From IMG/VR virus record IMGVR_UViG_3300026521_000003, positions 1-64,000 of that record: DNA of 64,000 nucleotides; one strand, given 5' to 3'. Below the pieces are notes generated by a model, which was not told the origin of the DNA, did no database searches, and saw nothing but the letters and a program-made list of their open reading frames with translations. Of the stretch, positions 26,642 through 45,426 are shown piece after piece. The translations under genes and the position numbers were made by a program. The stretch's first letter is position 1. Each line of letters opens with the position of its first letter.

Positions 26642-27028
26642 TTAAAAACTATATACGTTTAGACTATCTATAAATTCATTCCATTCTTCGATACTATTAT
26701 TACTAAATTGTTCAGCATTTTCTTTATCAAATGTAAATCCGATATTAGGAACTTTCTCTAAAATACGCTTATAAAAATTTATATCTTCAAACGTATTTTT
26801 AATTGAAATTTTTATATTTGTTTTTTTTAATTTATTTAATGTTGTTATTATTGTAGACATACGTTCACCACGTTTAAAACCTGTTACTTTTTCCGATAAA
26901 TCACCTACTATAAAATATTTTATACCATGCTCATTAGCTGTTTCTAATTCTTGCATTAATTTTAAATTAATACTCTCAATTTCTTCATTAAATTTATATA
27001 AACCTAGTACAGTATTTAATTCATTCAT
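26642..27028 (-). CDS. Hypothetical protein
   Basis: GAGGA RBS. Confidence 0.55.
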   Translation of the reverse strand: MNELNTVLGLYKFNEEIESINLKLMQELETANEHGIKYFIVGDLSEKVTGFKRGERMSTIITTLNKLKKTNIKISIKNTFEDINFYKRILEKVPNIGFTFDKENAEQFSNNSIEEWNEFIDSLNVYSF

Positions 27029-27157
27029 AATAATCCTCTTGTTTAGTCCTAATTTGTATTATTATTTAGTTAAGTTTTTTACTTTATTATAAAGTTTATT
27101 TCTATATATTTTAAAGGAATTTTACAAAATGTTATTTTTAACCCCTTTAAAATATGA

Positions 27158-28117
27158 CTATTTATGGAGCCAAGATTTAATAATTTCTTTCTGTTTTTGA
27201 CTAAGATCAACATAAAAAATTTCTATTTCTACTATAAAATCCCCGATTTTATCTTTATTAATTGACTTAATACCTTTTTCTTTAAAAACTAATTTCTTTT
27301 TATTTTTTATATCATTGGTGTCAATAGTAATTTGTTCATCAACACCATCAATAATAATTTCATCTTCTATTAAAATATCTAACACATTAAGTTTTAAAGT
27401 CTTATATATATCTAAACCATCTCTCCTAAATTCACTATCATTATTAATATTAAGTTCAATATATAAATCACCTTTTATATTATTAATTTTATTAGCTTTA
27501 CCTCTCATAACTAAACGGGTATGATTGTCGACTCCTGATGGTACAACACATTTTAATTTTATAATCTCTTCTTTGAATCCTAGACCATCACAGCTACTAC
27601 ATGAATATATTTTTGTATATCCTATACCTTTACAGTTTGAACATAATATATTTGTAGTAACAAATCCACTCTTACTTTGAATAGTGCCATTACCGTCACA
27701 ATTTGGACAGGGCTTAAAGTTACCACCATACCCGTTACATTCATTACATTCACTCTTTTGCTTAAATTCAAATGGTATTTCGACACCAATGATTGATTCA
27801 TAGAAATTAATGTGCATTTGAATTACTTCATCTTTTTTAAAAGTTTTTTTTAATTTCTTTTTGATTTCTTTCTTTGGGTATCTAAAAATTGTACGTGTAT
27901 TTTTATTATAACTATAATAAAGTTTATCATAATCAGAACGTTTTTGTGAATTTGAAAGAATATCATAAGCCGCATTAATCTTTTTAAAGATAGTTTCAGC
28001 CTCTAAGTCTTTATTTAAATCTGGGTGATATTTTTTTGCTAATTTTCTATACTTATATTTTATATCCTCTAATAAAGCATTAGGAGATATTTCCAAAATC
28101 GCATAATAATCAATCAT
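27158..28117 (-). CDS. dnaJ: DnaJ co-chaperone
   Basis: DYYAIL, J-domain KYHPD, four CxxCxGxG repeats, C-terminal domain. Start MIDYY follows GGAG. Confidence 0.92.
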   Translation of the reverse strand: MIDYYAILEISPNALLEDIKYKYRKLAKKYHPDLNKDLEAETIFKKINAAYDILSNSQKRSDYDKLYYSYNKNTRTIFRYPKKEIKKKLKKTFKKDEVIQMHINFYESIIGVEIPFEFKQKSECNECNGYGGNFKPCPNCDGNGTIQSKSGFVTTNILCSNCKGIGYTKIYSCSSCDGLGFKEEIIKLKCVVPSGVDNHTRLVMRGKANKINNIKGDLYIELNINNDSEFRRDGLDIYKTLKLNVLDILIEDEIIIDGVDEQITIDTNDIKNKKKLVFKEKGIKSINKDKIGDFIVEIEIFYVDLSQKQKEIIKSWLHK

Positions 28118-28170
28118 AGTTACTCCATTTTTAAGATATTTATTTAAGGAAATTAACATAAGTATTAATT

Positions 28171-28187
28171 TTGCAATATTTTTGCCA
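28171..28187 (-). promoter_or_regulatory. Candidate sigma54 (-24/-12) promoter facing dnaJ
   Basis: Minus strand TGGCAAAAATATTGCAA = GG-N10-GC. Confidence 0.4.
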
Positions 28188-28194
28188 TTTTAGT

Positions 28195-28221
28195 TTAAGT
28201 TTTTTGCACTATAACCGATAT
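28195..28221 (+). promoter_or_regulatory. sigma28 (FliA)-type promoter for the flagellin gene
   Basis: TTAAGTTT-N11-ACCGATAT versus consensus TAAAGTTT-N11-GCCGATAA, 100 bp upstream of the flagellin ATG. Confidence 0.75.
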
Positions 28222-28282
28222 TCTAATTGTAAGAGAAATATATACTACATTATATCATATTTCTCTTTAAATTAAACTTAAA

Positions 28283-28319
28283 TGGAAAAGGAATTTCCAC
28301 TTTACACATTGGAGGTGTA
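28283..28319 (+). promoter_or_regulatory. Two CsrA-type GGA-loop hairpins in the flagellin leader; the second contains the Shine-Dalgarno
   Basis: TGGAAA-AGGAA-TTTCCA (28283-28299) and TACAC-ATTGGAG-GTGTA (28303-28319). Confidence 0.65.
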
Positions 28320-28321
28320 TC

Positions 28322-29125
28322 ATGTTTAATTTAGGACAAGCTCAATCAATTTTAGGGATTAATAATTCAAATGATCAAATTTATAGATTAAATGAGCAGT
28401 TACAAACAGGTAAAAGAATTAACAGAGCGGCAGATGATGCTTCTGGTATGGCTATCGCAAACCAACTTAAATCACAAGCTAATGGTTTGGGTCAAGCCAT
28501 TAGAAATTTAAATGAGGCAATTTCATTAACAAACATAGCTGATGGAGCTTTAGAAGAATATACTAAAGTCCTTATGGAAATTAGAGATAAAGCGTCTCAA
28601 GCAATTTCTGATTCAAATTCAACCGAATCTAGAACAGCTTTACAAAATGATATTAATGAAATGATTAAATCTGCGGAAGCTATAGCAACTGATACGTCTT
28701 ATAATGGTATTAAATTATTAGATGGTACTTTTACAAATAAAGTATTCCAAACTGGGGCATATAGTGGACAAACAACATCTATATCAATTTCTAGTGTTAA
28801 AACAGCTGATTTGGGTATTGATGCGTTGACAGTTGATACTTCTACAAACGCTGCAACAGCATTGGATAATATCGATGCTGCTCTTAAATCTCTTGACGGT
28901 ATTAGAAGTGGTATCGGTTCTGTTACACAAGGTCTTGAATCTAAAGTTAGAAATATGCAAGTAACACAACAAAACGTCTTATCTGCAGAATCTAATATTA
29001 GAGATGTAGATGAAGCACAAGCAAAAGCTGAATTAGATAACTGGACTGTTAGAAATCAAGCTGCAATGTTCGCATTTAATATGGCAGCTCAACAACAACA
29101 AAGTATTCTAAGATTATTCCAATAG
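28322..29125 (+). CDS. Minimal flagellin (D0/D1 only), phage-encoded
   Basis: TGKRINRAADDASGMAIA, YNGIKLLDG, FQTGA, AESNIRDVD, C-terminal QSILRLFQ; 267 aa. Confidence 0.95.
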   Translation: MFNLGQAQSILGINNSNDQIYRLNEQLQTGKRINRAADDASGMAIANQLKSQANGLGQAIRNLNEAISLTNIADGALEEYTKVLMEIRDKASQAISDSNSTESRTALQNDINEMIKSAEAIATDTSYNGIKLLDGTFTNKVFQTGAYSGQTTSISISSVKTADLGIDALTVDTSTNAATALDNIDAALKSLDGIRSGIGSVTQGLESKVRNMQVTQQNVLSAESNIRDVDEAQAKAELDNWTVRNQAAMFAFNMAAQQQQSILRLFQ

Positions 29126-29139
29126 AATATTAAGATTAT

Positions 29140-29164
29140 AGGAGGGTTATTAACCCTCCTTTTT
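29140..29164 (+). terminator. Rho-independent terminator after flagellin
   Basis: AGGAGGGTTA-T-TAACCCTCCT followed by TTTT. Confidence 0.8.
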
Positions 29165-29182
29165 AATTAAAAGGAGATTATT

Positions 29183-29467
29183 ATGGGTGGATATGCTAAT
29201 GACGTAAGTAGTTTTTTATCAATTTTTTATTTTCGCATGGAAGAGAAATTAAATGAATTAATAGAATTGAGTAAAGATAAATCATTTGATAGTACTAAGA
29301 AAAGTGTTGCAATTAAAGACAAATTAATCGAAGCATTAGATATGCTTACAATGAGTGCATCAGATGATAAAATAAAAGAATTTACTGATTATCTAAGTAC
29401 GAAAATTATTCTAGGTAAAGTAGAAGATTTAGAGGACGCAAAACGTGTATGTAAACTAATACGGTAA
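29183..29467 (+). CDS. Putative FliS-like flagellin chaperone (divergent)
   Basis: All-helical, 94 aa. FLSIFY..MEEKL, FTDYLSTKI and LEDAKRVCKLIR align by eye with FliS helices (L.MLY...I.FL; LYDY...L; LDEV...L..LR). Lies between flagellin and flaG. Confidence 0.45.
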   Translation: MGGYANDVSSFLSIFYFRMEEKLNELIELSKDKSFDSTKKSVAIKDKLIEALDMLTMSASDDKIKEFTDYLSTKIILGKVEDLEDAKRVCKLIR

Positions 29468-29478
29468 AGGAGATAACT

Positions 29479-29799
29479 ATGATTCAGGAATTAACAAAAT
29501 CATTATCTAATTCAATACCTTCTATAAACTATACTGAACCACAATTAAATAATATACAAGAAAAATCTTTTAATGAAATACTTGATATTGAGAAAAGTAT
29601 AAATGAAGTTAATGAGTTATTAAAAGAAAAGAATCTAAAAGTTGAGTTAAATAGAGATATTAATATGATACAGATAAAAGAATTTGATGAAACTGGTGAA
29701 ATAGTATTAAAATCTACTCCACCAGAAGAATATATAAAAAGAGTTAAATACTTTAAAGAAAATATTCTTCCTAGTTTATTATTGGATGAAAAGGTTTAA
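29479..29799 (+). CDS. flaG: FlaG family protein
   Basis: INEVNELL...D.TGEIVLKSTPPEEYIK...LLLDEKV, the characteristic FlaG C-terminus. Confidence 0.8.
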   Translation: MIQELTKSLSNSIPSINYTEPQLNNIQEKSFNEILDIEKSINEVNELLKEKNLKVELNRDINMIQIKEFDETGEIVLKSTPPEEYIKRVKYFKENILPSLLLDEKV

Positions 29800-30563
29800 C
29801 TTTTAGACTTTAATTTTTCAAAAGCTAGTTTTTCCGCTTCAACATCTATATTATTAGATAATCTCAATTCGGTTGGGAAAGTATTTTCAATATACGGTGT
29901 TAAAACTGGTGGAACAAACTCTTTCCATTCATCAGATTCATCCATAATAGCTTTTCGGATTTCTGTTCCGCTCATACAAATACTTTCTTTTAGTCTATCA
30001 ACAATATGTATTTGAATAGTATTTTCACCATATTCTTCATTTAGAGCATTAAACCAACTTGCATCATGCTTAGAACCAGCATAGTAATGATTTGGTTTTG
30101 GTAGGTTCATACCATCAATTTTACCAAATACAAAAGAAGCCCAGGCAATTTTAGAAACCGCACCAAGATCTTTAAGCTCTATAATTTTTAATTTAGATTT
30201 TTTACCTGTTACACCAAAAACTTTTTCAATCATCTCTCTACGTTGTTTCGGTGTAAATGGATTATTAATATTGCCACTTTCTTGAATTGAACCTAAACCA
30301 ATAATGACAATATCCATTTCTTTCATCATACGAGAAATCAATTCAAAGTGACCATTATGCATAGGTTGCATTCTCATTACAGCTAATCCAACGTTTGGAA
30401 GCATTTCAATGTTTGTAACCTCTAAATCATCATCTTGATAATCTTCTTTTAATATCTTGATAGCAGCTTGCTCGGAATTTGCTTTCACAGTTTCTATTTC
30501 ATCATATGTAGAATTAAATTCATCTTCATATTTAAAGCTAATAGTGTAGGTATTCATAATCAT
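29796..30563 (-). CDS. Nicotinamide-nucleotide adenylyltransferase (NadM/NMNAT-like)
   Basis: RMQPMHNGH, IGLGS, NPFT...R..MI, SGTEIRK, W..FVP. Confidence 0.85.
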   Translation of the reverse strand: MIMNTYTISFKYEDEFNSTYDEIETVKANSEQAAIKILKEDYQDDDLEVTNIEMLPNVGLAVMRMQPMHNGHFELISRMMKEMDIVIIGLGSIQESGNINNPFTPKQRREMIEKVFGVTGKKSKLKIIELKDLGAVSKIAWASFVFGKIDGMNLPKPNHYYAGSKHDASWFNALNEEYGENTIQIHIVDRLKESICMSGTEIRKAIMDESDEWKEFVPPVLTPYIENTFPTELRLSNNIDVEAEKLAFEKLKSKS

Positions 30564-30625
30564 TCTTTTTCTCCTTAGTTATACTTTTTAACTTTGGTTA
30601 AATACTATAACAGTTTTTTCTTTAT

Positions 30626-30974
30626 GCACCACGCTGAGAAAACCCAATGATCTTTAGCCATTGGGATGAATCAGCAATAATGTTGTTAATTATATCAAAT
30701 TCAATATTAATTTTGTATTAATTTTACATTAAAATAATGTAAAAAGTATATAGATATAAAGTTTAAGGAGATCGGATTGAAATTAAATCGCAACTACAAA
30801 TATAGATTACAACCAAATACCAAACAATCCGATTTCCTTAAACTTTATTTCTTTACTGCAGATCAATCAGAATCTTTGTATCGAGAATGTCAGTTAATTC
30901 TGAAATTCGATGATTGGAGTGCCTCTCGGCACTCCCTTAGAAGCCCAATCGTCTTTAGCGGTTGGGTAGTTCAC
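30626..30974 (+). mobile_element. Internally deleted IS200/IS605-family (IS1341/TnpB) element
   Basis: Preceded by TTTAT. Left hairpin CCCAATG-ATCTTTAGC-CATTGGG, related right hairpin CCCAATCG-TCTTTAG-CGGTTGGG, ends in TTCAC. Contains a tnpB 5' stub. Confidence 0.8.
30777..30974 (+). pseudogene. tnpB: tnpB remnant (N-terminal HTH stub joined to the right end)
   Basis: MKLNRNYKYRLQPNTKQ matches the TnpB N-terminus. No RuvC or zinc finger follows. Confidence 0.75.
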
Positions 30975-30996
30975 TATACTAAATTATACATTAAAA

Positions 30997-31365
30997 TTAT
31001 TTTAACTCACATCTAGAAAGGTGAAATGTAGAACTAGGTATATGTCCTTGTTTTTTATCATATATTTGCCAACCATTAACAGGATCATTAAAGATTTCAT
31101 AAGTTTTAGTATGATAAATACGTATTGCCCCTTGGGGTGATAAACATATTAAAGTGGGATAATCATTTCTAACAAGATTAAGGGCATTTTCTCTAAAATT
31201 TGTTTTTTTAAAGAAATCTAGTTTAATAAATATTACGGAAATAATTAAAATAGGAACAATTATTGCACTCCATATCTTCACTAATATAAAAAAATCTGAA
31301 ATATATATTTTTTTAAGTCTATTTTTAATTAAAGCATATTTATTTTTATTATCTTTGATTGTCAT
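30997..31365 (-). CDS. Hypothetical membrane protein
   Basis: One hydrophobic segment. Confidence 0.55.
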   Translation of the reverse strand: MTIKDNKNKYALIKNRLKKIYISDFFILVKIWSAIIVPILIISVIFIKLDFFKKTNFRENALNLVRNDYPTLICLSPQGAIRIYHTKTYEIFNDPVNGWQIYDKKQGHIPSSTFHLSRCELK

Positions 31366-32703: not shown

Positions 32704-33593
32704 ATGAATTTTAAAAAATTTAGAACACAATTTTTTGATACTTTTAACTTTGAAATTGATGGAAGATTACATTATGTATATAGAATTACAGAAATCGATA
32801 CAAATATGTCATATATTGGATCTAGAACATGTAATAGGTCTATCCACGATGCATATACTACATGCACCAATGATTTAAAATCTTATGGTACATCATCATA
32901 TAGAAAAGAATTTATAAAAGCAAACTTAGATAAATTTAAATTCAAGATATTACGAATTTTTGATAATTCGGTTGACAAAATATTATTTGAATCATTTATA
33001 CATCAGAAATTTGACGTTAAACATAATAATAAATTTTGGAATAAATCAAATCACACACCTAATGGTTGTGATACTACTGGAAGACAATTTACTCATAGTG
33101 AAGACCATATTAAAAAGAGAACTGAATCGAGATCAAAAACGATGTTGGAAGTTGGTGAAGATGGATTAAATAGGTATCAGAGAGCAAGTATAAAAGCAAA
33201 TAAAACAAAATTAAAGAAAGATAAGAATGGGTTAAGTCAATATCAGAAATTAGCTAAGAAAGCTTGGACGACAAAAAAGAAAAAGGATTTAAATTTACTT
33301 CAAAAAATAATCCACGTTTAAATACAATAATAATTATGAATGATAATGATGAAATTATTGAGATTATTGAAAGCTCATTTACTACTTTCTGCAAAGAACA
33401 TAAATACCCTATGAATGCGTTTAGGAAATCATATATTGCTAAAGGCAAAAAAATATATATTGATTTAGATAATGGTAATTTAAAGAAAATGAAAGATACT
33501 TTTGAGTATAATACATTTAAAGGGTGGTACGCTATAAAATATATAGATCTTTCCGATGAATTAATTAAAAAAGTAAAGGAGTTTAAAAGGTGA
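32704..33593 (+). CDS. GIY-YIG (Seg-like) homing endonuclease in two overlapping frames (32704-33321, 33264-33593)
   Basis: YVYRIT...SYIGSR, Y.TSS, E..., FWNK. The frames join at A AAA AAG (33273-33279). Confidence 0.75.
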
Positions 33594-33964
33594 AATTTTT
33601 AGTAGTAGATGATTCATCAACAATGAGACGAATTATAAAGAATACAATTATAAGATTGGGGTATAAAAAAGAAAATTTATTTGAGGCAGAAGATGGCGAA
33701 GTAGCATTAAATTTATTTAGAGAAAAAGGGAATGATTTTTTTGGGATAATTTTAACAGATATAAACATGCCGAATAAAAATGGATATGATTTAATAAAAG
33801 AAGTAAGAAAATTGGATGAGAATATACCAATCGTAACTATCTCAACAGAGGGTGGAAAATCTGAAGTTTTGAAAGCTTTAAAACTTGGTTCGACAAATTA
33901 CATCGTTAAACCGTTTACACCACAAGTACTTAAAGAAAAATTAAAAGATATACTTGGAGAATAA
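33590..33964 (+). CDS. cheY: Chemotaxis response regulator CheY
   Basis: VVDDSSTMRRIIKNT, TDINMP (phospho-Asp), TEGGK, NYIVKPFTPQVLKEKL, closely matching Campylobacterota CheY as I recall it. Confidence 0.92.
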   Translation: MKFLVVDDSSTMRRIIKNTIIRLGYKKENLFEAEDGEVALNLFREKGNDFFGIILTDINMPNKNGYDLIKEVRKLDENIPIVTISTEGGKSEVLKALKLGSTNYIVKPFTPQVLKEKLKDILGE

Positions 33965-44240: not shown

Positions 44241-45179
44241 ATGAATAATCCTTTTAAAAATAAATTTGTAGTTAATCTTCACCATGCTGATTTTGATGGC
44301 GCTGTATCTGGAGCATGTGTTAAAAGTTGTTTGGGTGAAAATGTAATTTCCAAAAGCATAGCTATAGCAAAAGCAGAATCAGAAATAAGAAAAATTATAA
44401 ATGATATTGATATAATTTTATTAACGGATTTAGGCTTATATCCAGATGATAAAAATAACGACTTAATAGATAAAATTAAAGATAATAAAATAATCATTTA
44501 TGATCACCATATTAATCCAGCGTCAGAAGATATGTTTGCAAATTTACCAAAAGCAAACATAAGTGTATTGGAAAATGATATTTGTGGTGCAACATTAACA
44601 TGGATAAAGATGTTAGAATATTTTCCTTCTAATTCTTTTTTATACGAATTGGAGGATATCGTTTATTTAAGTGATGTCTATGATATGTGGCGTATAGATA
44701 ATAAAGATTTTGAATATGCTGTTAAGATTAATGATTTATTAGACTATCAGATTGGATATAACCCAGATCAATTTAGAGATCGATGGTTAAAAAATCCGAA
44801 TCCATTCAAATTAACGAAAAAAGAACATAAAATAATTGATACGAAGCAAATAAGAGGTGAGAGAAATTTAAAAGAATTAGAAGAAAATGCTATTATTTTT
44901 GAATACAAAAATATTATAGTTGTTTTAACGGAGGCATCATCACCAACTGACTTTATAAAAATGAAGTTTATGAATTATGTTTTAGAAGAAGAAAATGTTG
45001 ATATGTTTATATTTAAGTATCCAAATACAACACAATGTTCTGTGAGAATACCACAATCATCATCAATATTAGACTTAAATGATTGGTATGATGACTTTGG
45101 ATGTAAAGGACATTCACATGCTGGCGGAATACCAGTAAATGAATACCCAAAATTAGAAAAAATACTAAAAATTATTTAG
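44241..45179 (+). CDS. DHH-family phosphoesterase
   Basis: HADFDG, TDL, YDHH, CGA, GHSHAGG. Confidence 0.85.
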   Translation: MNNPFKNKFVVNLHHADFDGAVSGACVKSCLGENVISKSIAIAKAESEIRKIINDIDIILLTDLGLYPDDKNNDLIDKIKDNKIIIYDHHINPASEDMFANLPKANISVLENDICGATLTWIKMLEYFPSNSFLYELEDIVYLSDVYDMWRIDNKDFEYAVKINDLLDYQIGYNPDQFRDRWLKNPNPFKLTKKEHKIIDTKQIRGERNLKELEENAIIFEYKNIIVVLTEASSPTDFIKMKFMNYVLEEENVDMFIFKYPNTTQCSVRIPQSSSILDLNDWYDDFGCKGHSHAGGIPVNEYPKLEKILKII

Positions 45180-45405
45180 TAGCTTTTTCTTTCATTAAAA
45201 CTACAGCAGCTTCAATTGCTAAGTTCAACATATGTGATGCAAAATCAGTTCCAAGTTCTTTAGCCTCTGCTATAACTTTCTCTCTCTTTTGCGCACCAGA
45301 TAATTCATTATTCAATGCAACATTATTTACAAGATCTTTTATTTTTCCAAAAACATCTTTACCAATAATATAATTCATTACTTTATCTAATAACCATTTC
45401 CACAT
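45172..45405 (-). CDS. Small protein, possibly holin-like
   Basis: SGAQKREKV...LNLAIEAAV resembles LL-H-type holin tails; late motif upstream. Confidence 0.4.
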   Translation of the reverse strand: MWKWLLDKVMNYIIGKDVFGKIKDLVNNVALNNELSGAQKREKVIAEAKELGTDFASHMLNLAIEAAVVLMKEKATK

Positions 45406-45426
45406 TTTTAATCTCCTTATTAAAAG

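What the first reader, a model, noticed from the sequence alone, without database searches (positions are those of the whole stretch)
28195..28321. Phage flagellin is wired into the host sigma28 and CsrA-FliW circuits
Seen: TTAAGTTT-N11-ACCGATAT, then an 11-bp stem at the predicted transcript start (AAGAGAAATAT 28231-28241 / ATATTTCTCTT 28257-28267), then two hairpins each with GGA in the loop, the second holding the Shine-Dalgarno. Established: this matches the sigma28 consensus and the architecture of CsrA-bound flagellin leaders (C. jejuni flaA, B. subtilis hag), where flagellin, FliW and CsrA form a partner switch. Inference: the gene is expressed only in flagellated, FliA-active cells, and its mRNA or protein could titrate CsrA or FliW and so rewire host post-transcriptional control. 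It also implies the host has FliA.
Basis: partly seen in the sequence, partly recalled or inferred. Interest (0 to 1): 0.82.

Follow-up and report, generated by a model that had tools for sequence, protein, structure and literature searches.

The report
Phage flagellin gene keeps host flagellar controls
A huge phage carries its own flagellin gene, complete with the late-flagellar (sigma-28) promoter and the CsrA-type mRNA leader that Campylobacter and Helicobacter relatives use for their own flagellin, so the phage gene is probably switched on and throttled by the host's flagellum-assembly checkpoints.

Summary
TTAAGTTT-N11-ACCGATAT (28195-28221) is the only intergenic sigma-28-type site in the 64 kb window. 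An equivalent site lies upstream of the flagellin gene in all 13 related loci examined.

The roughly 94-nt leader has three parts:
- a stem-loop at the predicted 5' end (28231-28267);
- SL1 (28283-28299), with AGGAA in its loop;
- SL2 (28303-28319), with the Shine-Dalgarno GGAG in its loop. Its GGA lies 21 nt after the SL1 GGA, the spacing reported for C. jejuni flaA.

SL1 is an AAGGAN hexaloop on a stem that covaries across 17 phage and Campylobacterota flagellin leaders. H. pylori flaA has the same SL1 plus SL2 layout.

The gene ends in its own terminator. A FliS-like and a FlaG-like gene follow it. Two of the related contigs also carry FlgM.

The phage flagellins form one clade nested among Campylobacterota and Desulfobacteria flagellins.

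The cis-wiring is therefore supported by comparison. FliA dependence, CsrA binding and FliW titration remain untested. A FliA promoter on prophage flagellin is already published; the CsrA-type leader on a huge-phage flagellin cassette appears to be new.

The parts
28195..28202 (+). -35 element of a sigma-28 (FliA)-type promoter, TTAAGTTT
   Evidence: Matches TAAAGTTT at 7 of 8 positions. It is identical to the -35 of the FliA-bound E. coli ycgR promoter listed in PMC4183435. An equivalent element is present in 13 of 13 relatives.
28214..28221 (+). -10 element of the sigma-28-type promoter, ACCGATAT, 11 nt after the -35 octamer
   Evidence: The CCGATA core is intact. The same ACCGATAT is found in L002, L161, L167 and L250, and close variants in the other relatives. 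The same type of site lies upstream of Sulfurimonas-like and other Campylobacterota flagellin genes.
28228..28230 (+). Predicted transcription start (inferred, not measured)
   Evidence: It lies 7-9 nt after the -10. In most relatives a stem begins 3-4 nt after the equivalent point.
28231..28267 (+). 5'-terminal stem-loop (perfect 11-bp stem, 15-nt loop region); probably an mRNA 5'-end stabiliser
   Evidence: Among the 13 loci (window included), a stable 5'-proximal hairpin of unrelated sequence sits at the same offset from the -10 in 9; shuffle z ranges from -1.9 to -5.3 and the mean over all 13 is -2.5.
28268..28277 (+). 5' arm of a possible long-range helix that pairs with 28324-28333 (the last base of the AUG and codons 2-4), enclosing SL1 and SL2
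   Evidence: A 10-nt perfect complement (I5), predicted in the fold of 28228-28335. It is seen only in close relatives and shows no covariation, so it is weak.
28283..28299 (+). SL1: hairpin with the GGA (28290-28292) in an AGGAA/AAGGAA loop; candidate high-affinity CsrA site
   Evidence: In an anchored alignment of 17 phage and Campylobacterota flagellin leaders, 93.8% of cells pair, against 46.6% in shuffles. There are 27 cells changed on both sides, against 7.3 in shuffles, and pairing collapses when the partner is slid.
28303..28319 (+). SL2: hairpin with the Shine-Dalgarno GGAG (28311-28314) in the loop; candidate second CsrA site that would block ribosome binding
   Evidence: Stem variants are UACAC/GUGUA, AGAC/GUCU, UCAC/GUGA, UUAC/GUAA and, in H. 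pylori, UAAC/GUUA. The GGA lies 21 nt after the SL1 GGA. GGAGGUG is the longest Shine-Dalgarno sequence in the window.
28322..29125 (+). Flagellin, 267 aa, with D0/D1 domains only
   Evidence: Pfam Flagellin_N and Flagellin_C. The best NCBIfam models are Helicobacter/Campylobacter FlaA and FlaB. About 60 close relatives were found, the long contigs among them 150-496 kb. The phage sequences form one clade.
29140..29168 (+). Intrinsic terminator closing the flagellin transcription unit (9-bp G+C-rich stem, then TTTTT)
   Evidence: Hairpins of different sequence, most of them followed by a T-rich run, sit right after the stop codon in most relatives examined.
29183..29467 (+). 94-aa four-helix protein, probably a FliS-like flagellin chaperone
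   Evidence: It is conserved directly downstream of the flagellin in 10 loci. The AlphaFold model has pLDDT 89.9. Five of the top 8 Foldseek PDB hits are FliS, with probability up to 0.97 and TM 0.55-0.72, but E-values of only 0.3-0.9. There is no sequence-family hit.
29479..29799 (+). FlaG-like protein, 106 aa
   Evidence: Pfam FlaG, E 2.2e-5, 25 bits against a cut-off of 23.8. NCBIfam FlaG is weak. A FlaG-like gene is annotated after the 94-aa gene in L161, L162, L163, L164, L167, L249 and L250.

Best explanation
Positions 28195-28321 are the control region of a self-contained late-flagellar gene cassette carried by a huge phage.

Shown by sequence and comparison:
- a sigma-28-type promoter;
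- a leader of about 94 nt with a 5'-terminal hairpin;
- an AAGGAA-loop hairpin (SL1);
- a hairpin that displays the Shine-Dalgarno GGA (SL2);
- a minimal flagellin gene, then an intrinsic terminator;
- a FliS-like and a FlaG-like gene after that.

Inferred mechanism:
1. Host RNA polymerase carrying FliA transcribes the gene only once the host hook-basal body is finished and FlgM has been exported.
2. The 5' hairpin protects the mRNA.
3. One host CsrA dimer bridges the two GGA loops, which lie 21 nt apart, and blocks ribosome binding.
4. When cytoplasmic flagellin is low because it is being exported, free FliW removes CsrA and translation resumes.

The phage flagellin would thus be made only when, and as fast as, the host flagellar export apparatus can secrete it. 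It would probably be co-assembled into the host filament or replace the host subunit.
For: Promoter:
- It matches the -35 octamer at 7 of 8 positions and the -10 at 6 of 8, with the CCGATA core and 11-nt spacer intact.
- It matches the FliA-bound E. coli ycgR promoter at 15 of 16 specified positions.
- The chance of such a match in this gap is about 0.001.
- It is unique among intergenic regions of the window and of 12 related 12.8-kb loci.
- It is present in 13 of 13 relatives and upstream of cellular Campylobacterota flagellin genes.

Leader:
- The fold is as described, and 0 of 3000 shuffles give two GGA-loop hairpins.
- SL1 covaries across 17 leaders.
- SL2 stems covary, with four different Watson-Crick pairs at one stem position.
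- The architecture and the 21-nt spacing equal the C. jejuni flaA leader, in which CsrA footprints both loops (PMC4894983).
- H. pylori flaA has the same two hairpins.

Cassette: own terminator, FliS-like gene and FlaG-like gene.

Origin: the phage flagellins form one clade (support 100) within a clade of Campylobacterota and Desulfobacteria flagellins. The best NCBIfam and PDB matches are Helicobacter and Campylobacter flagellins. The control elements survive across about 50% protein divergence, for example L005, which argues for selection within phage genomes.
Against: - There is no experimental transcription start, FliA dependence or CsrA binding.
- The host is unknown, so its FliA, CsrA and FliW are assumed from the Campylobacterota affinity.
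- Five of the 13 related leaders (L163, L249, L166, L167, L168) lack SL1, and two (L162, L167) lack a convincing SL2. The two-site design is therefore not universal.
- The SL2 loop in the window reads UUGGAG, which lacks the A two bases before GGA in the C. jejuni motif.
- In this A+T-rich genome, 15 of 36 other genes with GGA in their ribosome site also have at least 4 complementary flanking bases.
- A covariance model built from cellular SL1 hairpins alone ranks the leader only 4th in the window (11.5 bits, E 3.3).
- Only 64 kb of the 290-kb genome was examined, so a phage sigma factor, FlgM, CsrA or FliW elsewhere is not excluded.
Confidence: 0.6

Rival explanations
1. The promoter and leader are relics carried along when the flagellin gene was captured from a Campylobacterota-like host. 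They have no role during infection; the gene would be silent or expressed from a phage promoter.
For: The elements are the same kind as those of cellular flagellin genes, so inheritance by capture is the simplest origin. Weak sigma-70-like matches exist upstream, but not above chance.
Against: The phage flagellins are one old clade. Even so, the promoter is kept in 13 of 13 members, and SL1 and SL2 are kept with compensatory changes across about 50% protein divergence. Neutral relics in A+T-rich, tightly packed phage genomes (3.5 kb of intergenic DNA in 64 kb) would have decayed.
Confidence: 0.1
2. The promoter is read by a phage-encoded FliA-like sigma factor, or is gated by a phage FlgM. The cassette would then run on the phage's own schedule rather than on the host checkpoint.
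For: Two related contigs carry a 70-aa FlgM homologue within 6 kb of the flagellin gene (Pfam PF04316; NCBIfam TIGR03824, E 2e-8). Huge phages often encode sigma factors (my own knowledge). 226 kb of this genome was not seen.
Against: No sigma factor or FlgM domain was found in the ORFs of the window, although one search lists only 25 of 36 families. The site type occurs only in front of the flagellin gene, not in front of other phage genes. Two scans of viral contigs for FlgM relatives found nothing, at low sensitivity.
Confidence: 0.12
3. The hairpins work without CsrA. The 5' stem and SL1 would only stabilise the mRNA, and SL2 would only tune ribosome access to a very strong Shine-Dalgarno sequence.
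For: GGAGGUG is itself an extended Shine-Dalgarno sequence. Hairpins around ribosome sites are common by chance in this genome. Five relatives lack SL1.
Against: The SL1 loop AAGGA is invariant over 17 leaders while the stem changes freely. That is the signature of a protein-recognised loop. It equals the (C/A)A(A/T)GGA CsrA motif and the footprinted flaA SL1.
Confidence: 0.15
4. The flagellin-like protein is a virion part, such as a head or tail fibre, and is not exported through the host flagellum.
For: PHROG families of unknown function contain flagellin-like phage proteins. Tail-fibre-like genes lie 5-14 kb away. The first 24 residues differ from the usual flagellin N-terminus.
Against: The gene has a late-flagellar promoter, a CsrA-type leader and its own terminator. 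It has FliS-like and FlaG-like partners and full-length D0/D1 domains. It sits among replication and metabolism genes.
Confidence: 0.05

Closest known systems
C. jejuni flaA 5'UTR with the CsrA-FliW switch (Dugar et al. 2016, PMC4894983), and the H. pylori flaA leader
   Same: A sigma-28 promoter. Two adjacent stem-loops with GGA in their loops, the second over the ribosome-binding site. 21 nt between the GGAs. Compensatory base changes among relatives.
   Different: The window's leader is about 94 nt rather than 45 nt and has an extra 11-bp hairpin at the 5' end. The SL2 loop is UUGGAG rather than ANGGA. It sits in a huge-phage genome. CsrA binding has not been tested.
B. subtilis hag leader and the Hag-FliW-CsrA partner switch (PMC6529632, PMC6070490; Yakhnin 2007 and Mukherjee 2011 from my own knowledge)
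   Same: SigD/sigma-28 transcription. Two CsrA sites, one in a hairpin loop and one over the Shine-Dalgarno sequence. Flagellin D1 regions that bind FliW are present in the phage protein.
   Different: A different phylum and no sequence similarity of the leaders. FliW binding by the phage flagellin is untested, and its first 24 residues are atypical.
Prophage fliC_P-TldR flagellar remodelling modules of Enterobacter (Wiegand et al., PMC10705468; PMC13418256)
   Same: A phage-borne flagellin expressed from a host FliA/sigma-28-type promoter. The idea that the phage changes the composition of the host filament.
   Different: No TldR or guide RNA is present here; there is only a 26-residue TnpB N-terminal stub 1.6 kb away. 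This is a huge phage with no integrase domain among the Pfam hits returned for the window's ORFs, and a Campylobacterota-type gene. It has a CsrA-type leader and FliS-like and FlaG-like partners, none of which are described for fliC_P.
E. coli FliA promoters (ChIP-seq list in PMC4183435)
   Same: TTAAGTTT-N11-ACCGATAA at ycgR is nearly identical to the window's TTAAGTTT-N11-ACCGATAT.
   Different: A different organism, and only a consensus comparison.

Membership tests
Sigma-28 (FliA/SigD)-dependent late flagellar promoter | -35 element TAAA(GTTT) | tested here: met
   TTAAGTTT matches at 7 of 8 positions and is identical to the E. coli ycgR -35.
Sigma-28 (FliA/SigD)-dependent late flagellar promoter | -10 element (G)CCGATA(A/T), 11 nt after the -35 octamer | tested here: met
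   ACCGATAT with an 11-nt spacer and the CCGATA core intact.
Sigma-28 (FliA/SigD)-dependent late flagellar promoter | Located upstream of a late flagellar gene and conserved in orthologous loci | tested here: met
   It lies 100 nt upstream of the flagellin ATG. It is present in 13 of 13 relatives and is the only intergenic site of this type in the window. Chance in the gap is 23 of 20000.
Sigma-28 (FliA/SigD)-dependent late flagellar promoter | Transcription start 7-9 nt downstream, and dependence on FliA | not testable with these tools
   Needs 5' RACE or dRNA-seq and a fliA mutant or in-vitro transcription.
CsrA-repressed flagellin leader (flaA / hag type) | At least two GGA motifs in the 5'UTR, one in the apical loop of a hairpin | tested here: met
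   The SL1 loop is AGGAA (28289-28293). 0 of 3000 shuffles give two GGA-loop hairpins.
CsrA-repressed flagellin leader (flaA / hag type) | One GGA overlaps the Shine-Dalgarno sequence | tested here: met
   GGAG at 28311-28314, with 7 nt between it and the ATG, lies in the SL2 loop.
CsrA-repressed flagellin leader (flaA / hag type) | Loop sequence fits (C/A)A(A/T)GGA / ANGGA | tested here: inconclusive
   SL1 (AAAGGA) fits. SL2 in the window (AUUGGA) lacks the A at position -2. Relatives have CAAGGA, CACGGA or CAUGGA.
CsrA-repressed flagellin leader (flaA / hag type) | GGA spacing suited to one CsrA dimer (optimum about 18 nt; 21 nt in flaA) | tested here: met
   From 28290 to 28311 is 21 nt. 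It is 20-21 nt in L161 and L082 and 39-48 nt in L162, L250 and L251.
CsrA-repressed flagellin leader (flaA / hag type) | Structure supported by compensatory changes | tested here: met
   SL1: 93.8% of cells paired against 46.6% in shuffles, and all 4 pairs show changes on both sides. SL2: five stem variants, but the background of chance stems is high.
CsrA-repressed flagellin leader (flaA / hag type) | Detected by a model built only from cellular leaders | tested here: inconclusive
   A 20-position covariance model of nine cellular SL1 hairpins scores the window's SL1 at 11.5 bits, E 3.3, rank 4 of 10 in 64 kb. The model is too short to be decisive.
CsrA-repressed flagellin leader (flaA / hag type) | CsrA binds and represses; the host has CsrA and FliW | not testable with these tools
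   The host is unknown. CsrA and FliW are documented in C. jejuni and H. pylori. No CsrA or FliW domain was found in the window's ORFs.
Flagellin (Pfam PF00669 + PF00700) | N- and C-terminal helical D0/D1 domains | tested here: met
   E 1.4e-35 and 3.3e-15, both above the cut-offs.
Prophage fliC_P-TldR remodelling module | Nuclease-dead TnpB (TldR) and a guide RNA next to the phage flagellin | tested here: not met
   Only a 79-aa ORF whose first 26 residues match the TnpB HTH domain. No TnpB or TldR is annotated in the relatives' flanks.
FliS flagellin chaperone (for the 94-aa ORF) | Four-helix bundle of FliS type, encoded next to flagellin | tested here: inconclusive
   The model (pLDDT 89.9) has four helices. 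FliS structures are the top Foldseek hits, but E is 0.3-0.9. No Pfam, NCBIfam or PDB sequence hit. Adjacency is conserved in 10 loci.

The most novel reading that the evidence does not exclude
A whole clade of huge phages, probably infecting Campylobacterota, carries a plug-in late-flagellar module: a sigma-28 promoter, a CsrA-type leader, a minimal flagellin, a terminator, a FliS-like and a FlaG-like gene, and FlgM in some members. On this reading the module does more than add a subunit. At phage copy number, its leader RNA soaks up CsrA and its protein soaks up FliW, so infection reprograms the host's CsrA regulon and refits the filament, for example to exclude flagellum-dependent rival phages.
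Probability: 0.2. Interest if true: 0.8.

Novelty: new variant of a known kind. Interest (0 to 1): 0.6.

Why it matters
Phage-borne flagellins were recently shown to remodel host flagella in Enterobacter prophages, using the host FliA promoter. This case would extend that idea in three ways:
- to a large, uncultured clade of huge phages;
- to a different bacterial phylum;
- to post-transcriptional control, because the phage gene appears to keep the CsrA-binding leader that couples flagellin translation to export.

If correct, the phage gene obeys both host assembly checkpoints. In C. jejuni the flaA leader is itself the main CsrA sponge, so a replicating phage genome could shift the host's CsrA regulon.

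It also gives a host clue (a flagellated, FliA-bearing, Campylobacterota-like host) for a phage lineage with no close relative among GenBank phage records.

Tried and rejected
- **Rfam scan of 27900-28500:** only chance-level hits.
- **blastn of 27000-31000 against GenBank phages:** nothing relevant. tblastn with the flagellin gave only matches of 36% identity or less.
- **RNAalifold on a MAFFT alignment of four whole leaders:** recovered only SL2, because indels misaligned the hairpins. I replaced it with loop-anchored alignments.
- **Covariance model of cellular SL1 alone:** too short to single out the leader.
- **SL2 background test:** chance A+T stems around ribosome sites are common (15 of 36), so SL2 alone is weak evidence.
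- **Other sigma-28-like sites, testing whether the phage uses this promoter type generally:** none is intergenic.
- **FlgM relatives in viral contigs, two scans:** nothing found; the patterns were poor.
- **TldR idea:** only a TnpB N-terminal stub. Relatives have a homing endonuclease at that spot, so it looks like a landing site for mobile elements.
- **PDB sequence search for the 94-aa ORF:** noise only.
- **The 77-aa ORF at 45172-45405, whose ribosome site also sits in a hairpin loop:** not CsrA-like.
- **Metagenome and genome scans:** no cellular flagellin was more than 55% identical to the phage one over its best-matching segment, and about 40% over the full length.

Full report
**What is there.** The window is the first 64 kb of a 289,880-bp IMG/VR viral contig. 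It has 28% G+C and is tightly packed with genes (3.5 kb intergenic). The gene content is phage-like:
- a T4-type topoisomerase II split by homing endonucleases, a clamp loader, a ligase and a piece of DNA polymerase B;
- a repeated virion-protein N-terminal motif and tail-fibre-like genes.

ORF 28322-29125 is a 267-aa flagellin with only the D0/D1 domains. It diverges from a DnaJ gene (27158-28159, minus strand). The 162-nt gap between them therefore holds no gene end that would call for a terminator.

**The observation.**
- TTAAGTTT (28195-28202), an 11-nt spacer, then ACCGATAT (28214-28221);
- a perfect 11-bp inverted repeat at 28231-28241 / 28257-28267;
- SL1 at 28283-28299, with AGGAA in the loop;
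- SL2 at 28303-28319, with AUUGGAG in the loop, which is the Shine-Dalgarno sequence;
- the ATG at 28322.

The thermodynamic fold gives exactly these hairpins, with z = -3.56.

**Is it more than chance?**
- Over the whole window a match with 3 mismatches or fewer is unremarkable (2 found, 1.37 expected).
- A match inside this particular gap arises in only 23 of 20000 shuffles.
- It is the only intergenic sigma-28-like site in the window and in twelve related 12.8-kb loci.
- Two GGA-in-loop hairpins arise in 0 of 3000 dinucleotide shuffles of the leader.

**Relatives.** The protein database holds about 60 clusters of 267-269-aa flagellins that are 55-91% identical. Many sit on contigs of 150-496 kb. 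I fetched 12 such loci.

- All 12 have a sigma-28-type site in front of the gene: TAAAGTTT or a near variant, a spacer of 10-12 nt, then (A/G)CCGATAT or a close variant.
- In nine of the 13 loci (window included) a stable hairpin of unrelated sequence begins 3-4 nt after the point where transcription should start. This points to a conserved 5'-terminal RNA structure rather than a DNA operator.
- Eight of the 13 have a hairpin with AAGGA(A/U) in its loop.
- Eleven of the 13 present the Shine-Dalgarno GGA in a hairpin loop.

**Comparison with cellular genes.** Flagellin genes of Sulfurimonas, Sulfurospirillum, Helicobacter and unclassified Campylobacterales have the same sigma-28 site, followed by a short stem around an AAGGA(A/C/U) hexaloop. 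This also holds for contigs from the same metagenome series.

In a loop-anchored alignment of 17 phage and cellular leaders, the loop AAGGA is invariant while the stem varies freely:
- 93.8% of cells pair, against 46.6% in shuffles;
- 27 cells have changes on both sides, against 7.3 in shuffles;
- pairing collapses when the partner is slid by one column.

Only 5-11% of AAGGAN words elsewhere in these sequences have 3 or more flanking pairs.

H. pylori flaA (L223) shows SL1 (AAGGAU loop) and an SL2 that holds the ribosome site (UAAC/AAGGA/GUUA). This is the same layout as L161 (AGAC/AAGGA/GUCU) and the window (UACAC/AUUGGAG/GUGUA).

In C. jejuni, CsrA footprints exactly such a pair of loops in the flaA leader. 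Mutating either GGA relieves repression. The GGAs lie 21 nt apart and the leader itself titrates CsrA (PMC4894983). In the window the GGAs are also 21 nt apart (28290 and 28311).

**Weak points.**
- SL2 on its own is not very distinctive, because 15 of 36 other ribosome sites in the window have 4 or more complementary flanking bases.
- The SL2 loop in the window lacks the A two bases before GGA.
- Five relatives lack SL1.
- A covariance model built from nine cellular SL1 hairpins ranks the phage SL1 only 4th in the window, at E 3.3.
- Rfam has no matching family.

**The cassette.** An intrinsic terminator follows the stop codon (29140-29160 plus a T run). Hairpins of different sequence, most followed by a T-rich run, occupy the same place in most relatives. 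The flagellin gene is therefore a self-contained transcription unit.

A conserved 94-101-aa ORF comes next. It folds confidently (pLDDT 89.9) into four helices, and its best PDB matches are FliS chaperones, though with weak E-values. A FlaG-like gene follows.

Two related contigs carry a FlgM homologue nearby. No FliA, FlgM, CsrA or FliW domain was found in the window's ORFs, although one search lists only 25 of 36 families. The other 226 kb of the genome were not examined.

**Origin and host.**
- In a maximum-likelihood tree the phage flagellins, including a 50%-identical sub-group (L003, L005), form one clade with support 100. That clade sits inside a clade of Campylobacterota and Desulfobacteria flagellins, also with support 100.
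- The best NCBIfam models and several of the best PDB chains are Helicobacter or Campylobacter flagellins.
- No species-representative genome holds a flagellin more than 55% identical over its best-matching segment, or about 40% over the full length.
- GenBank phage records hold nothing closer than 36%.

The most economical reading is one old capture from a Campylobacterota-like host. Both the coding sequence and its control elements were then retained under selection within this phage lineage.

**Mechanism.** The cis elements, their conservation and their identity in kind with experimentally characterised host elements are shown. The rest is inferred:
1. Host FliA holoenzyme transcribes the gene only after hook-basal-body completion.
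2. The 5' hairpin stabilises the mRNA.
3. A CsrA dimer bridges SL1 and SL2 and blocks initiation.
4. FliW, freed when flagellin is exported, lifts the block.

FliW contacts the D1 helices of flagellin (PMC6070490), and the phage protein retains these. Binding could not be tested.

**Prior knowledge and novelty.** Prophage-encoded fliC_P in Enterobacter was shown to use the host FliA promoter, next to a TnpB-derived repressor that silences the host gene (PMC10705468; PMC13418256). So the sigma-28 half of the idea is not new in kind.

There is no TldR here, only a 26-residue TnpB stub 1.6 kb away. I found no report of a phage flagellin with a CsrA-type leader, or of this huge-phage clade.

I rate it a new variant of a known kind: a real, conserved and testable feature of moderate to high interest.

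Noticed in passing
window 30777-31016 (+), within the 430-nt gap 30564-30996: A 79-aa TTG ORF whose first 26 residues match the TnpB/OrfB HTH domain (Pfam HTH_OrfB_IS605, E 4e-5). It is a stub of an IS605-family element, 1.6 kb downstream of the flagellin. Relative L249 has an HNH/NUMOD3 homing endonuclease at the equivalent spot, so this looks like a landing site for mobile elements rather than a TldR system.
   Followed up: partly
L163, L249, L165, L166, L167, L250, L251: the 60 nt upstream of the -35 element (for example L165 5890-5960): TTAAA(G) words, copies of the -35 core, recur every 10-11 nt (positions about -20, -31, -42, -53 and -64 relative to the -10). This is one helical turn apart and suggests phased bending or an UP-like element. 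The window itself has only the -35 copy.
   Followed up: partly
window 29156-29176 (+): A second hairpin (CTCCTTTT / AAAAGGAG) overlaps the 3' arm of the flagellin terminator and pairs with the Shine-Dalgarno sequence of the FliS-like gene. The terminator and this hairpin exclude each other.
   Followed up: no
L162 323-535 (-) and L167 526-738 (+): 70-aa FlgM (anti-sigma-28) homologues on two related huge-phage contigs, within 6 kb of the flagellin (Pfam PF04316; NCBIfam E 2e-8 and 2e-7, both just below the cut-off). No sigma-28-type site precedes them.
   Followed up: partly
L163 1-1055, L249 1-1064; L161 9706-10071, L163 9516-9905, L249 10555-10932; one Response_reg hit among the 25 window ORFs scanned (ORF not identified; by synteny probably in 32704-33964): The relatives encode a PAS-HisKA-HATPase-receiver hybrid kinase. 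They also encode a single-domain, CheY-sized response regulator in conserved synteny a few kb from the flagellin cassette. The window has one Response_reg hit (E 2.5e-24). This hints at wider interference with host signalling or motility.
   Followed up: no
L167 3517-3960, L168 2088-2513, L250 2925-3368; L162 7833-9788; L168 8773-9789: The related contigs carry SmpB, FtsH-like protease, RecA, gyrase B, HSP20 and DnaJ genes near the flagellin. These are cell-like genes of the kind reported for huge phages.
   Followed up: no
window 45406-45425 (-), upstream of the 77-aa ORF 45172-45405: The ribosome site AAGGAG sits in the loop of a perfect 7-bp hairpin (UUUUAAU / AUUAAAA). It was the second-best hit of the SL1 model (13.4 bits). 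The ORF is not CsrA-like.
   Followed up: partly
window 28268-28277 and 28324-28333 (+): A 10-nt perfect complement between the leader and codons 2-4 of the flagellin. It would enclose SL1 and SL2 and the start codon in a three-way junction. It is conserved only in the closest relatives and shows no covariation.
   Followed up: partly
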